Below, in pieces: positions 4,593 through 56,079 of a stretch of DNA of 64,000 nt. Source of the DNA: Saccostrea echinata (Eukaryota); contig NW_026889778.1 of the NCBI RefSeq assembly GCF_033153115.1, positions 25,730,001-25,794,000 of the forward strand, given 5' to 3'. The notes under the pieces were generated by a model, which saw nothing but the letters and a program-made list of their open reading frames with translations, ran no database searches and had not been told where the DNA came from. Position numbers and translations under genes: made by a program. The first letter of the stretch is position 1. Each line of letters opens with the position of its first letter.

Positions 4593-6632
4593 TTACACTC
4601 TATTCTCAGTTCTCTCGAAAAATGTATGCATTCTTAAAATTGTTGCCCTTTGAATTCTATGATGGGGATATTGTTGGAGTGAATATTGATAAGAATTAAA
4701 AGCATCAATGTAATCCCCGCAGATTTGTTGACAGATCCCCAGTATCTGCCAGGATATGTCTCTGTAGTATATAGGAACACGATATCCAACATCATGCAAT
4801 AATAGATATCGGAGATCCTGTAGAGATAGTTGTGACCTGTTTGTATCTCCCAGTCTGTAATGATTTAGTGCTGATAACATGTGTAGCATCACTAGAGGGG
4901 GGATATATAACACTGGCATCGGACTCATCTTCTGTTCTAGCATCAGTTCATCAAGGTATGTATAAGCACAGTATAACTTAATGTCAAACATAACAGCTTT
5001 TCTCATTTTATTACTCAGAGACACTCCACCCAATGCACGTCTGTACCTGTCTATTATGATAACATCATTATACAAAATGCAAGGAATAGTCATCTTTTTT
5101 TGTGCTTTTTGTAGATATCTCAGTGATTGGTGATATCTACCGATCCTATAGCAGTATAAACATAGGTACAGGATGTCTGATACATATCCTATTTTAGAAA
5201 CTAACCTAAGCAGGTTAAAAGATATGTGATTCAGATACGATAGATTTTTGTTTGAAAGGTTAGTAAATGTGCATAAATATTTCTGTAAAGAAAATACAGT
5301 ATTGCAAAATAAATCTGATGTCATGCTCTGTATAGCAACTTTCTGAAAAGGAGTCAGTGCTAATTTAAGTAACTTTTCGATTTCTCGAACATACAGTGTG
5401 AAGTCAGTCAAATCATCTAATAAAACAAACAACCTAGTTATTTCCGTAAAGAACCCGATATGCAAAAAATCACTGGAGATGATGCTTTTCTCATCTGTTT
5501 TAATTGACAGTGTTTTGTGGATGATGACTTGGCTAAGATAAGGTCTGAGAGAAGGACTCAGAAGGAGGCAAGGCATTCCCATGCCATACAAATCATATAA
5601 TTGACTAAACAAGTGTGATTGTGCAGAACCAGATACTTTCAACCTAAACATGTTGTTTTGAGGAATGAAAAAATTCGGACACTCAGCTATTCTCACCCAG
5701 TTAATTAATAATCTGAAACACTTCCAAAAACACAGAAGTATTGTGCGAGGTGTCCATAGCAATGAATTTTCATTTTGTATTGACCAGAATAAAATCGTTT
5801 TCATGAAATATGAACAAAGAATTGGATTGTTGCTTTTCGGATTGATCACCTCTTTCAGGAAAATCTTTAAGAGACCATAGCACAAAAACTGACAATGATT
5901 CATGGAGTATACAAGTCTCTGTTCTGCCATTGAAAATGAAATTCTCCATTCGCTGTTCTTATCAGAGCAAGACGGGAAACTACTAATTGGTACAACATGA
6001 CATCCTTTATCTAAAATATCAGATAAGATGCTTCTGTCAGGCCACTTCTTTTTCACACATCTTTGTATCCATGGAAATGCTATGGTCGGCCAGTGAGGAG
6101 AATGTAGACAAAATGCTATGTCCATTTCTTGAGTGTCGACTTCTAAAGTAGCACAAGGTCCATGTTCCACGGACGATGCTAGGTCATTCTTAATATACTG
6201 CAAACCATGCTTTCTGAATAAGGAACTAAGCAGATATAGTTCATTATTAACATGTAAACAGGAGGATCTCACGAGCTCATTATGCGACTGAGTTATAAGC
6301 TTTAGTCTTGTGAACCCGGGCGGCATCTCTTCTATGTCCATCAAAATCAACGTGTGTTGTGGCAGACGGTAGAAAATGGCCTGTGGGAGCTCACAAATCA
6401 CTTCATGGTCAGGAGGCCATATCATCCAATCGATATCTGACGTTTTAAGTCTAAATCCCTCACGAAAACTCCCACTCTTTATCATATCAGGTCCTTTAAT
6501 TCTAAACATTGACCTCGTCACCACCTCATCAATGTCCGCGATGTCTCTTCTGAACCTGACTTCTGTATGAGTTCCTACTTTTCGACACAATCCCACATAA
6601 ACAGCCTCTGACAAACGAGGGACTCTATCCAT
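4593..6632 (-). CDS. cGAS-like receptor (Mab-21/cGLR nucleotidyltransferase) with C-terminal TPR-like region; copy 1, subfamily A, intact, 679 aa
   Basis: Single ORF. NTase motif G54-S55…D66-I-D68 (SGSFREGFRLKTSDIDWM) and third Asp D171 (HGPCAT…EMDIAFCL). Mab-21 motifs [32 protein letters not shown]-like helices in the C-terminal half (SWQILGICQQICGDYIDAFNSYQYSL). Confidence 0.92.
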   Translation of the reverse strand: MDRVPRLSEAVYVGLCRKVGTHTEVRFRRDIADIDEVVTRSMFRIKGPDMIKSGSFREGFRLKTSDIDWMIWPPDHEVICELPQAIFYRLPQHTLILMDIEEMPPGFTRLKLITQSHNELVRSSCLHVNNELYLLSSLFRKHGLQYIKNDLASSVEHGPCATLEVDTQEMDIAFCLHSPHWPTIAFPWIQRCVKKKWPDRSILSDILDKGCHVVPISSFPSCSDKNSEWRISFSMAEQRLVYSMNHCQFLCYGLLKIFLKEVINPKSNNPILCSYFMKTILFWSIQNENSLLWTPRTILLCFWKCFRLLINWVRIAECPNFFIPQNNMFRLKVSGSAQSHLFSQLYDLYGMGMPCLLLSPSLRPYLSQVIIHKTLSIKTDEKSIISSDFLHIGFFTEITRLFVLLDDLTDFTLYVREIEKLLKLALTPFQKVAIQSMTSDLFCNTVFSLQKYLCTFTNLSNKNLSYLNHISFNLLRLVSKIGYVSDILYLCLYCYRIGRYHQSLRYLQKAQKKMTIPCILYNDVIIIDRYRRALGGVSLSNKMRKAVMFDIKLYCAYTYLDELMLEQKMSPMPVLYIPPLVMLHMLSALNHYRLGDTNRSQLSLQDLRYLLLHDVGYRVPIYYRDISWQILGICQQICGDYIDAFNSYQYSLQQYPHHRIQRATILRMHTFFERTENRV

Positions 6633-7526
6633 TTTGGTATGAATATTATACTTTACGACTTTTATAGACTTTCATCTTTTTCTGGAAATTCCTTACTGAA
6701 TTTTCTATGAATAATAGATATTTGCTATTTGTTATGCACAAAAAGAGAAACATATCACCCTTTACATCGCGGAGAAATATTCTTTATGTGCTTATGTATT
6801 TGCTTGACTAAATAAATAGTACTTAAAACAAGTACAACTTTATCAGAAATAATGTCCTCAACCCACTGGGGAATATCTCAAGTAAAGAGTAATACTCTTC
6901 TAAGAGTTGCATACCATATATAGCTCTAAGCTACAAGTGTCTGAACAGTGCGAACGTTAGATGTGCTCTTGTTTTGTAATGTTTATGCATGTAGAATGGA
7001 TATGTTAATAATCATTTATAAACAATGTCCTGACATATTTGAAAAAAAGACAAAACTTTCCAAAACATATGGACACATAATGGAAAGTTAATTCATATTT
7101 AATACTAGTAACCTCAGATTTTGTGCAAAATGTGTTACAAGTAATACAAATTAAGAATTATTCTATTACTTTGATGTTCATAAACGTGTCCTTAAAATTA
7201 ACATATAACAAATAAATTTTCCAATTTTCTACGATTCATGAAATGGATATGTATATCGTGCCCTATAGATGTCCGGAGCGGATGATGATAGACGGCGGAT
7301 TTATATATAAAATGAAAAAAAAGGTAGGCAAGGGGAAATTTATACAATTGACCTGAGGTTTAAATGATAGAAATGATGAGTATACTCTGGTCACGTAATA
7401 TTTTTTTATGTTATTAGAATTTGTATGATTAAAACTAAAATTCATTCATGATAATGTATCAATGAATTTTGATTTTATCTACTATGTAACTAGTGAACTT
7501 CCAATGACATAAAAGACCCAAACCCT

Positions 7527-54035: not shown

Positions 54036-56079
54036 TTACAGTCTATTCTCAGTTCTTTCGAAAAGTGTGTGCATTCTTAAAATTGTTGCCCTTTGAATTC
54101 TATGCTGAGGATATTGTTGTAGTGAATATTGATAGGAATTAAAAGCATCAACGTAATCCCCGCAGGTTTGTTGACAAATCCCTAGTATCTGCCAGGATAT
54201 GTCTCCGTAGTATACAGGAACATGATTCCCAACATCATACAATAATAGATTTCGGAGATCCTGTAGAGATTGTTGTGACCTGTTTGTGTCTCTCTGTCTG
54301 TAATGATTTAGTGTTGATAACATGTGTAGCATCACCAGAGGAGGGATATATAACGCTGGCATCAAAGTTAACGCCTGTTCTAGTATAAGTTCATCAAGGT
54401 ATGTATAAGTTTGGTATAACTTGATGTCAAACATCACAGCTTTTTTCATTTTATCACTCAATGAGACTCCCTCCACAGCACGTCTGTACCCGTCTATTAT
54501 GATAACATTATTATACAGAATGCAAGGAACAGTCATCTTCTTTAGTGCTCTCTGTAGATATCTCAGTGATTGATGATAACTGCCTGTCCTTAACAGTATA
54601 TACATAGGTACAGGATATCTGATACACATCCTACTTGAGAAACTAACCTAAGTAGATTACATGATACATGAATCAGATACGATACATATTTGTTGGAAAG
54701 ATAACTAATTTTGCATAAAAATTTCTGTAAAGAAAATACAATATTGCAAAATAATTCCAATGTCATGTTCTGCACAGCAACTTTCTGAAAAGGAGTCAGT
54801 GTTTATTTAAGTAATTTTTCAATTTCTCGAATATACAGTATGAAATCAGTCAAATCACTTAATGGAACACATAATGTAGTTATTTCCGTAAAGAGCCCAA
54901 TATGCAAGAAATCACTGGAAATGTTGCTTCTCTCATCTGTTCTAAACGACAATGTTTTGTGGATGATGGCTTGGCTAAGATGAGGTCTGAGAGAAGGACT
55001 CAGTAGGAGGCAAGGCATTCCCATGCCATACAAATCATACAATTGACTAAACAATTGTGATTGTGCAGGACCAGATACTTTCAACCTAAACATGTTGTTT
55101 TGAGGAATGAAAAAATTCGGACATTCACCGATTCTCACCCAGTTTATTAATAATTGGAAACACTTCCAAAAACACAAAAGAATTGTACGAGGTGTCCATA
55201 GTAATGAATCTTCATTCTGTATAGCCCAGAATAAAATTGTTTTCATGAAATATGAACAAAGTATTGGATAGTCGCGTTTCAAATTGATCACCTCTTTCAG
55301 AAAAATCTTTAAAAGACCATAGCACAAAAAATGACAATGATTCATAGAATATACAAGTCTCTGTTCTGCCATTGAAAACGAAATTCTCCATTCGCTGTTC
55401 TTATCAGAGGAAGACGGGACACTACTTATCGGTACAACATGACATCCTTTTTCTAAAATATCAGATAAGACGCTTTTATGAGGCCATTTCTTTTTCACAC
55501 ATCTGTGTATCCACGGTAATGCTATGGTCGGCCAGTGAGGAGAATGTAGACATATTGCTATGTCAATTTCTTGAGCATGGGCTTCGAAAGTAGCACATGG
55601 TCCATGTTCCACGGACGATGGTAGGAAAAAAACAGTCTGAACATGTTGCAAACATTTCTCTCTGAATAAGGAACTAAAGAGATATAGTTCATTATTAATA
55701 TATAAACAGGAGGATCTCACGAGCTCATTACACGACTGAGTTATTAGCTTTATCTTGTGAACCCGGGCGGCACCCCTTCGATCTCCATCAGAATCAAAGG
55801 GTGTTGTGACAGACGGTAGGAAATGGCCTGAGGGAGCTCACAAATCACTTTTTGGTCAGGGGGCCATAACATCCAATCGATATCTGACGTTTTAAGTCTA
55901 AAGCCCTCACGAAAACTCCCACTCTTCATCATATCAGGTCCCGTAATGCTAAACTTTGACCTCGTCATCACCTCCTCAATGTCCGCAATGTCTCTTCTGA
56001 ACCTGACTTCTGTACGAGTTCCTACTGTTCGACACAATCCCACATAAACAGCCTCTGACAAACGAGTTATTCTATCCAT
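54036..56079 (-). pseudogene. cGLR copy 6, subfamily A, disrupted
   Basis: 1-bp deletion at ~55752, in-frame TTA>TAA at 54803-54805, and 1-bp deletion at ~54591. Four ORF fragments together rebuild a full-length cGLR. Confidence 0.9.

What the first reader, a model, noticed from the sequence alone, without database searches (positions are those of the whole stretch)
4593..56079. Tandem birth-and-death array of six intronless cGAS-like receptors with a TPR-like tail
Seen in sequence: six co-oriented ~680-aa paralogues about 8-15 kb apart, in two subfamilies, three intact and three disrupted. Every copy keeps the GS…DxD…D NTase triad. Established: cGLRs are innate-immune sensors that make cyclic dinucleotides for STING, and the family is greatly expanded in bivalves. 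Inference: this is a rapidly turning-over pattern-recognition locus, analogous to NLR or R-gene clusters. I cannot recognise its ligands or nucleotide products as characterised, so it is the best candidate for an undescribed system in this window.
Basis: partly seen in the sequence, partly recalled or inferred. Interest (0 to 1): 0.85.

Follow-up and report, generated by a model that had tools for sequence, protein, structure and literature searches.

The report
Oyster cGAS-like receptor tandem gene array

Summary
Six co-oriented (minus-strand) Mab-21/cGAS-like paralogues lie 8-16 kb apart. c1, c3 and c5 are intact (679, 678 and 681 aa). c2, c4 and c6 are broken by frameshifts, stop codons and, in c2, a 742-bp MITE insertion. 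There are two subfamilies, A (c1, c4, c5, c6) and B (c2, c3). All six keep the GS / DxD / D codons.

An AlphaFold model (pLDDT 93) matches oyster Cv-cGLR1, cGAS and MB21D2 at Z 23-26 over residues 1-365. Residues about 370-679 form a TPR-like solenoid (Z 9-12 to TPR proteins only). dN/dS is 0.3-0.5, and transcript-like contigs cover c1 without any joint inside the coding sequence, so the intact copies look functional.

The genome is Saccostrea echinata. The window is the left part of an array of about 18 copies over 175 kb that forms one clade, and it includes a further block duplication of about 60 kb.

The novelty claim fails. Li et al. 2023 already report more than 200 cGLRs per oyster genome and list TPR-fused cGLRs. 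They also put a C. virginica member of this subfamily (51% identical to c1) through their biochemical screen, and it carries no active-enzyme label in their screen table. Ligand and product are still unknown. Verdict: new members of a known kind.

The parts
4593..6632 (-). c1: intact single-exon cGLR-TPR gene, 679 aa, subfamily A. NTase core is about residues 1-365 (5538-6632) and the TPR-like tail about residues 366-679 (4596-5537).
   Evidence: Transcript-like contigs cover 4000-6743 with no joint inside the coding sequence.
6429..6473 (-). c1 catalytic G54-S55 ... D66-x-D68 codons (beta1 - GS - helix - beta2 of the Pol-beta-type NTase fold).
   Evidence: Invariant in the 77-sequence alignment A2. 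Secondary structure of the model.
6120..6122 (-). c1 third catalytic Asp (D171).
   Evidence: Invariant in A2. Aligned by HMMER to the Asp of the cGAS 'VDIILAL' strand.
19699..21701 (-). c2 body: pseudogene, subfamily B, with a 2-bp insertion near codon 104 (about 21427) and a TGA at codon 148.
21702..22443 (.). 742-bp foldback/MITE-like element inserted after codon 13 of c2. It has long imperfect inverted arms and a TA/TAC target duplication, and it is absent from the twin copy c2'.
   Evidence: (40 near-full-length hits scored, 88-90% identical, from 1149 first-look candidates in the genome).
22444..22480 (-). Severed first 13 codons of c2 (MEEVPRLSGALYV).
28752..30788 (-). c3: intact gene, 678 aa, subfamily B.
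37024..39045 (-). c4: pseudogene, subfamily A, with at least six frameshifting indels (about 38746, 38717, 38602, 38468, 37328, 37266) and a TGA at codon 342.
45643..47688 (-). c5: intact gene, 681 aa, subfamily A.
54036..56079 (-). c6: pseudogene, subfamily A, with 1-bp deletions at about 55752 and about 54590 and a TAA near codon 425.
737..4463 (.). Downstream flank of the c1 unit, repeated next to other A-type units (for example 50559-53891 next to c6, 86-94% identical). The duplicated unit is therefore gene plus flanks.

Best explanation
The window is the left part of a lineage-specific tandem array of cGAS-like receptor (cGLR) genes in the oyster Saccostrea echinata. Each intact gene (c1, c3, c5) is a single coding exon. 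It encodes a basic, cytosolic protein of about 680 aa. This has an N-terminal cGAS-type nucleotidyltransferase cage (residues 1-365) with all catalytic and nucleotide-contacting residues, followed by a TPR-like helical solenoid of about 310 aa. Shown here: the fold, the conserved residues, purifying selection, transcript-like coverage of c1, and growth and decay of the array. The array grew by unequal crossing-over of units of about 8.5 kb and by a later block duplication of about 60 kb. It decays through frameshifts, stop codons and a MITE insertion. Inferred: the intact proteins rest inactive until a ligand binds (to the basic core, the TPR tail, or both). They then make a cyclic di- or oligonucleotide that is read by one of the genome's several STING proteins. 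The ligand and the product are unknown. I put the gene-family and array part at about 0.9 and the part 'active second-messenger synthase feeding STING' at about 0.55.
For: Pfam Mab-21 and Mab-21_C are above cut-off in c1, c3, c5 and in the main c2 and c6 fragments. The PDB profile search ranks Sp-cGLR1 at 7e-21, cGAS at 2e-17, MB21D2 at 3e-13 and Cv-cGLR1 at 1e-12, well ahead of MAB21L1 at 1e-6. The AF2 model has pLDDT 93.4 and pTM 0.91. Foldseek's top hit is Cv-cGLR1. VIA-align gives Z 26.5 to Cv-cGLR1, 24.1 to cGAS, 23.6 to MB21D2 and 12-16 to bacterial CD-NTases over residues 2-365. G54, S55, D66, D68, D171 and the cGAS-like WRxSFS..E and SYxxKT motifs are invariant in 77 homologues that are 40-80% identical. 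For the tail, TPR_2 hits occur in 15 of 23 paralogues, and nearly all of the top 50 structural matches to the tail alone are TPR proteins, at Z 9-12.1. dN/dS is 0.28-0.51, higher in the tail (0.28-0.57) than in the core (0.26-0.45) for pairs diverged enough to measure. pI is 8.9-9.2. Contigs of four runs cover 4000-6743 but not the upstream spacer. STING ligand-binding-domain exons occur on four contigs of the genome, about nine gene-sized clusters if the near-identical C14 and C76 sets are both real. All 18 array copies form one clade with support 1.0 against 20 copies from other loci, and intact and broken copies are interleaved. The duplicated units include the flanks.
Against: No biochemical activity is known for any member. 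In the Li et al. screen table the closest tested relative (no. 99) and its neighbours (nos. 100-103) have an empty active-name field, so they were presumably inactive alone or with dsDNA or poly I:C. The literal published motif is not matched exactly: Ser replaces Q/T before GS, and the spacing to the third acidic residue is about 100 residues instead of 50-90. The 'RNA' label of the runs is the tool's guess, and c1 cannot be told apart from its 99% twin c1'. The TPR structural Z scores are below the tool's caution line of about 13 for helical repeats. Twelve of the 18 array copies are broken, so the locus as a whole is decaying.
Confidence: 0.75

Rival explanations
1. The proteins are non-catalytic, or STING-independent, Mab-21 scaffolds. 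The NTase cage only binds a nucleotide or a partner, and the TPR tail recruits downstream proteins. This would resemble MiD49/51, MAB21L1, or the shrimp Mab21 proteins reported to activate IKK-epsilon outside nucleic-acid sensing.
For: Relatives in the Li et al. screen table carry no active-enzyme label. TPR domains are typically protein-protein modules. MiD49 and MAB21L1 also match the core at Z 20-21. The abstract of PMC12928593 reports non-canonical Mab21 signalling in crustaceans.
Against: G54, S55, D66, D68, D171 and the nucleotide-contacting WRxSFS..E and SYxxKT residues are invariant across 77 homologues. This would not be expected without catalysis. Sequence profiles place the family closer to active cGLRs and cGAS (E 1e-17 to 1e-21) than to MAB21L1 (1e-6), and MiD proteins give no significant match.
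Confidence: 0.2
2. The array is an assembly artefact: the copies are uncollapsed haplotypes or mis-joined haplotigs.
For: The assembly seems to hold some duplicated haplotigs elsewhere, with identical scores for C47/C142 and C14/C76. A block of about 60 kb (window 4114-66619) recurs 98.5-105 kb downstream at 94-99.5% identity, with dS about 0.01, which is within oyster allelic divergence.
Against: The six copies in the window differ by 11-26% in DNA, with dS of 0.16-1.0, so they cannot be alleles. The 204 kb examined contains no N. The downstream block has different flanks and ends inside the coding sequence of copy c7, leaving a truncated fragment, as unequal crossing-over would. This rival therefore concerns only the second block, which lies outside the window. 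For that block I give about 0.3.
Confidence: 0.03
3. The whole locus is dead: the three open frames are pseudogenes that have not yet been hit by a stop codon.
For: Twelve of 18 array copies are broken. The exact c1, c3, c5, c9 and c1' proteins are not in the 15-billion-protein collection, although copies on contig C33 of the same genome are annotated.
Against: dN/dS between intact copies is 0.3-0.5 at dS 0.16-1.0, well below 1. Transcript-like contigs cover c1 in four runs from two studies. An open frame of about 2 kb in a genome of about 33% G+C would not survive long by chance.
Confidence: 0.05

Closest known systems
TPR-fused cGLRs of bivalves, as catalogued by Li et al. 2023 (PMC9980059). 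The closest example is screen entry no. 99, C. virginica LOC111101641 (XP_022289921.1).
   Same: Same architecture (Mab-21 NTase + Mab-21_C + TPR-like tail, about 680 aa) and the same motifs (SGSxREGF ... SDxDxM ... HGPC ... WRxSFS ... CSYFMKT). It is 51% identical to c1 (P0035).
   Different: It is a different species and a different, lineage-specific clade: no protein in the database is more than 57% identical to c1. Here the genomic organisation is resolved, with a tandem array, pseudogenes, a MITE insertion and a block duplication. The paper does not describe this.
Cv-cGLR1 (PDB 8gjw) and Cg-cGLR1, the oyster dsDNA-activated cGLRs. Sp-cGLR1 (8gjy), a coral dsRNA sensor that makes 3'3'-cUA.
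   Same: Best structural match (Z 26.5, 316 residues, rmsd 3.7) and best sequence match (Sp-cGLR1, E 7e-21). Same catalytic residues and basic pI.
   Different: Only 18-21% identical. Those enzymes have no TPR tail. Their ligand and product are known, and here they are not.
Human cGAS and MB21D2 (C3orf59)
   Same: Same NTase cage (Z 24.1 and 23.6). Some oyster relatives are named 'C3orf59' in UniProt. MB21D2 is likewise an orphan with an intact active site.
   Different: No vertebrate-type N-terminal extension or Zn-thumb was examined or claimed. There is an extra solenoid of about 310 aa. The coding sequence is a single exon, and the genes sit in a large tandem family.
NLR / plant R-gene style birth-and-death immune clusters
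   Same: Tandem paralogues, interleaved pseudogenes, unequal crossing-over, and a faster-evolving repeat-domain half.
   Different: This is an analogy only. The protein family is unrelated, and no site-wise positive selection was shown here.

Membership tests
cGAS-like receptors (cGLR; criteria of Li et al. 2023) | Active-site residues GS ... [DE]h[DE]h ... h[DE]h | tested here: met
   G54-S55, D66-I-D68-W and M-D171-I are present in c1. They are invariant in 77 homologues, and D171 aligns with the cGAS catalytic Asp. There are two deviations from the literal pattern: Ser, not Q/T, precedes GS, and about 100 residues, not 50-90, precede the third acidic residue. The curated screen entry no. 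99 shows the same Ser before GS in its printed sequence.
cGAS-like receptors (cGLR) | Homology across both the NTase core and the C-terminal helix bundle | tested here: met
   PF03281 (E 2e-7 to 7e-11) and PF20266 (E 1e-12 to 1e-14) are above the 24.1-bit cut-off in c1, c3, c5 and in the main c2 and c6 fragments.
cGAS-like receptors (cGLR) | Predicted structural homology to known cGLR / CD-NTase enzymes | tested here: met
   AF2 pLDDT 93.4. Foldseek E 9e-12 to Cv-cGLR1. VIA Z 26.5, 24.1 and 23.6 to Cv-cGLR1, cGAS and MB21D2, and 12-16 to bacterial CD-NTases.
cGAS-like receptors (cGLR) | Ligand-activated synthesis of a nucleotide second messenger | not testable with these tools
   This needs biochemistry. 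The nearest screened relative has no active-enzyme label in Table S3 of PMC9980059.
cGLR-STING pathway | A STING receptor encoded in the same genome | tested here: met
   PF15009 exon matches above cut-off occur on contigs C4, C14, C76 and C8. Coupling to these cGLRs was not tested.
Tetratricopeptide repeat (TPR) domains | Tandem 34-residue helix-turn-helix repeats recognised by TPR profiles and forming a TPR solenoid | tested here: inconclusive
   TPR_2 or TPR_1 hits are mostly below the gathering score, but they occur in 15 of 23 tails, with best E 1e-7 (28.8 bits in c5). In the tail-only model, nearly all of the top 50 matches are TPR proteins, but at Z 9-12.1, under the tool's caution line of about 13. 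'TPR-like' is justified. Strict membership is not shown. A beta-hairpin insert (residues about 551-577) is atypical.
Birth-and-death multigene family | Tandem paralogues from repeated local duplication, with pseudogenes interleaved among functional copies | tested here: met
   The array is one clade with support 1.0, and broken and intact copies are mixed in both subclades. Units share flanks. Lesions are independent in each copy. Intact copies are under purifying selection.

The most novel reading that the evidence does not exclude
The TPR-like tail, not the basic NTase surface, is the sensor. In this reading these cGLRs are switched on by a non-nucleic-acid ligand, such as a pathogen protein or peptide, in the way that bacterial RRNPP TPR sensors bind peptides. 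This would explain why relatives were silent with dsDNA and poly I:C. The rapid gain and loss of copies would then track pathogen effectors, giving a cGLR counterpart of NLR-type direct recognition.
Probability: 0.2. Interest if true: 0.75.

Novelty: new member of a known kind. Interest (0 to 1): 0.3.

Why it matters
Bivalves carry the largest cGLR repertoires known, and almost all of them are orphans. This locus offers a compact, well-resolved set of recent paralogues: three intact genes in two subfamilies, each with broken sister copies nearby. Such a set is convenient for asking what the TPR-fused cGLRs sense and what they make, and for measuring how fast such sensor arrays turn over. It does not reveal a new kind of system. 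The family, its radiation and the TPR fusion are all in the literature.

Tried and rejected
1. Uncollapsed haplotypes as an explanation of the six copies: rejected, because they are 74-89% identical in DNA with dS of 0.16-1.0.

2. Read-depth test of the second block: not possible.

3. Looking up a C. virginica homologue (XP_022288206) in Table S1 of Li et al.: not found, but that file was cut when stored, so this says nothing. Table S3 gave the useful link instead.

4. Other genes or RNAs in the spacers: there is no ORF longer than 160 aa outside the copies, no tRNA and no Rfam family.

6. ESM Atlas search with the tail: it returned only mollusc hypothetical proteins and Mab-21_C clusters, with no further lead.

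7. Literature searches for functional work on TPR-cGLRs in oysters: nothing beyond Li et al. 2023.

8. Earlier scan notes by words: blank.

10. Assigning the transcripts to c1 or to c1': not possible, because the contigs carry a mix of the letters that distinguish the two.
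Full report
WHAT IS THERE

The ORF list and a tblastn scan with the three long ORFs find six copies of one gene, all on the minus strand.
- c1: 4593-6632, 679 aa, intact.
- c2: 19699-21701, plus a severed 5' piece near 22444-22480.
- c3: 28752-30788, 678 aa, intact.
- c4: 37024-39045.
- c5: 45643-47688, 681 aa, intact.
- c6: 54036-56079.

Start-to-start spacing is 15.8 kb and then 8.3-8.6 kb. Subfamily A (c1, c4, c5, c6) is 74-82% identical in protein and subfamily B (c2, c3) is 86-93%. 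The intact A and B genes are about 59% identical to each other; with the broken copies included the A-B range is 50-61%. The spacers hold no ORF above 160 aa, no tRNA and no Rfam family.

HOW THE BROKEN COPIES ARE BROKEN

- c2 carries a 742-bp element (21702-22443) with long imperfect inverted arms and a TA/TAC target duplication, inserted after codon 13. The genome search scored 40 near-full-length hits of this element, 88-90% identical, from 1149 first-look candidates, so it is a MITE. c2 also has a 2-bp insertion near codon 104 and a TGA at codon 148.
- c4 has at least six frameshifting indels, which partly cancel each other out, and a TGA at codon 342.
- c6 has two 1-bp deletions (about 55752 and 54590) and a TAA near codon 425.
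- The GS, DxD and third-Asp codons survive in all six at DNA level. In c4 the third Asp sits in a shifted frame.

WHAT THE PROTEIN IS

Pfam gives Mab-21 (PF03281) and Mab-21_C (PF20266) above cut-off in c1, c3, c5 and in the main fragments of c2 and c6. The two c4 fragments gave only a sub-threshold TPR_2 hit or nothing.

A profile of 77 homologues ranks the solved structures in this order: Sp-cGLR1 7e-21, cGAS 2e-17, MB21D2 3e-13, Cv-cGLR1 1e-12, MAB21L1 1e-6. MiD49/51 give no significant match.

AlphaFold2 on that alignment gives pLDDT 93.4 and pTM 0.91. Foldseek puts oyster Cv-cGLR1 first. VIA-align gives the following over residues 2-365:
- Cv-cGLR1: Z 26.5, 316 residues aligned, rmsd 3.7.
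- cGAS: Z 24.1.
- MB21D2: Z 23.6.
- Sp-cGLR1: Z 23.3.
- Tribolium cGLR: Z 22.1.
- Bacterial CD-NTases: Z 12-16.

G54, S55, D66, D68 and D171 are invariant in the 77 sequences. So are the cGAS-like WRxSFS..E and SYxxKT nucleotide-contact motifs. D171 aligns with the catalytic Asp of the cGAS 'VDIILAL' strand. The literal motif of Li et al. is missed in two small ways: Ser replaces Q/T before GS, and the spacing is about 100 residues instead of 50-90. Their own screen entry no. 99 shows the same Ser before GS in its printed sequence.

THE TAIL

Residues about 370-679 are helical, with one beta-hairpin insert. TPR_2 or TPR_1 profiles hit 15 of 23 paralogue tails, mostly below the gathering score. 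A model of the tail alone (pLDDT 83.7) matches TPR proteins in nearly all of the top 50 rows. These include BtubC, PlcR, LGN, KLC1, Rap, Tom70, OGT, APC/C Cut9 and IFIT2, at Z 9-12.1. That is below the tool's caution line for helical repeats. 'TPR-like' is fair, but strict membership is not proven.

ARE THE INTACT COPIES FUNCTIONAL?

Pairwise dN/dS is 0.28-0.51 at dS 0.16-1.0. For pairs diverged enough to measure, the tail evolves faster (0.28-0.57) than the core (0.26-0.45).

pI is 8.9-9.2. This is in the range that Li et al. associate with nucleic-acid-sensing cGLRs.

Contigs from four public runs (two studies) cover 4000-6743 without any joint inside the coding sequence. They leave the upstream spacer (6758-7545) empty. 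This fits a single-exon transcript with a 5' UTR of about 110 nt. The runs' RNA label is the tool's guess, although the small run sizes and the gene-limited coverage fit RNA. The contigs mix the letters that distinguish c1 from its 99% twin c1', so the two cannot be separated.

STING ligand-binding-domain exons are present on contigs C4, C14, C76 and C8.

THE WIDER LOCUS

The window is G000:C29:25730001-25794000. Two annotated Saccostrea echinata proteins (P0009, P0013) are identical to translations of contig C33 of G000. The genome is therefore S. echinata.

The array continues to about window coordinate 176900, with about 18 gene-length copies plus fragments, of which 6 are intact. In a nucleotide tree all array copies form one clade (support 1.0) against 20 copies from other loci. 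They split into subfamilies A and B, with broken and intact copies interleaved. Duplicated units include the flanks.

Window 4114-66619 recurs at 109020-165465. Identity is 99.5% over c3-c6 and 94-97% over c1-c2. The right breakpoint lies inside the tail-coding part of copy c7 and leaves a truncated fragment. The twin c2' lacks the MITE, and c3' has a stop codon that c3 lacks. The block has different flanks and the region holds no N. I therefore favour a real, recent duplication by unequal crossing-over (about 0.7) over a haplotig artefact (about 0.3). Only read depth can settle this, and the runs on offer were contigs.

COMPARISON WITH THE LITERATURE

Li et al. 2023 (PMC9980059) report the following.
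- 3,020 cGLRs in 583 species, with 'extreme radiation' in bivalves: C. virginica 225 and C. gigas 168.
- Their Table S3 of 140 expressed proteins includes no. 99, XP_022289921.1 (LOC111101641). This is the same locus as my hit P0035, which is 51% identical to c1. Entries 100-103 are related. Their active-enzyme field is empty, while active entries carry names such as 'Cv-cGLR2'.
- The authors state that many cGLRs appear inactive in vitro, probably because their ligands are unknown.

The kind of gene, its expansion and its TPR fusion are therefore known. What is still unknown, here as there, is the ligand and the product.

MECHANISM PROPOSED

Shown: a cGAS-type cage with a complete active site, a TPR-like solenoid, purifying selection, probable transcription, and array turnover by unit and block duplication followed by decay.

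Inferred: ligand-triggered synthesis of a cyclic nucleotide signal that is read by STING. I give about 0.9 to the identity and array part and about 0.55 to the enzymatic signalling part.

The main rival (0.2) is a non-catalytic or STING-independent scaffold. The invariance of the catalytic and nucleotide-contact residues argues against it.

The most novel reading not excluded (0.2) is that the TPR tail senses a non-nucleic-acid ligand.

LIMITS

- Table S1 of the paper was truncated.
- There are no model coordinates for checking active-site geometry.
- Only c1/c1' was examined for transcripts.

Noticed in passing
window 21702-22443: A 742-bp foldback/MITE-like element with a TA/TAC target duplication. 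The genome search scored 40 near-full-length hits, 88-90% identical, from 1149 first-look candidates. It is absent from the twin copy c2', so the insertion is recent or polymorphic.
   Followed up: yes
window 4114-64000 and beyond (G000:C29:25734114-25796619 versus 25839020-25895465): A block of about 60 kb carrying c1-c6 and part of c7 is repeated 98.5-105 kb downstream. Identity is 99.5% over c3-c6 and 94-97% over c1-c2. The right breakpoint lies inside c7. This is either a real recent duplication or an assembly haplotig, and it is not settled.
   Followed up: partly
window 6459-6581: One transcript-like contig (run X2, 6009-6618) carries 15 clustered differences in 120 bp of the N-terminal coding part. 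They match none of the five A-type array copies checked (c4, c5, c6, c7, c9). This may be a very polymorphic patch, a gene-conversion tract or an unassembled paralogue.
   Followed up: partly
window 4394-4590, 7546-7939, 8925-9121: Short stretches with very high contig depth in all runs (up to about 990). They are probably expressed dispersed repeats in the 3' flank and the spacer of c1.
   Followed up: no
G000:C33:5.2-5.8 Mb and 28.28-28.85 Mb: There are other arrays of the same family (14 and about 7 copies among those scored), almost all with open frames. The C29 array, in contrast, has 12 of 18 copies broken. The protein search returned 785 first-look candidates genome-wide.
   Followed up: no
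G000 C47:10222589 versus C142:60285; C14 versus C76 STING loci: Pairs of loci on different contigs give identical scores in genome searches. This suggests that some uncollapsed haplotigs remain in the assembly.
   Followed up: no
c1, c3 and c5 in the window; L002:7777-9819; L005:5547-7583: The exact protein sequences of the five intact array copies checked (c5' was not looked up) are absent from the 15-billion-protein collection. Copies on C33 of the same genome are annotated RefSeq proteins (P0009 is identical to the L015 translation). The C29 array may be unannotated or modelled differently.
   Followed up: partly
window 31644-31953: A degenerate minisatellite, period 27 (also reported at periods 53 and 54), about 11 copies, 66-69% matches, in the spacer upstream of c3.
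   Followed up: no
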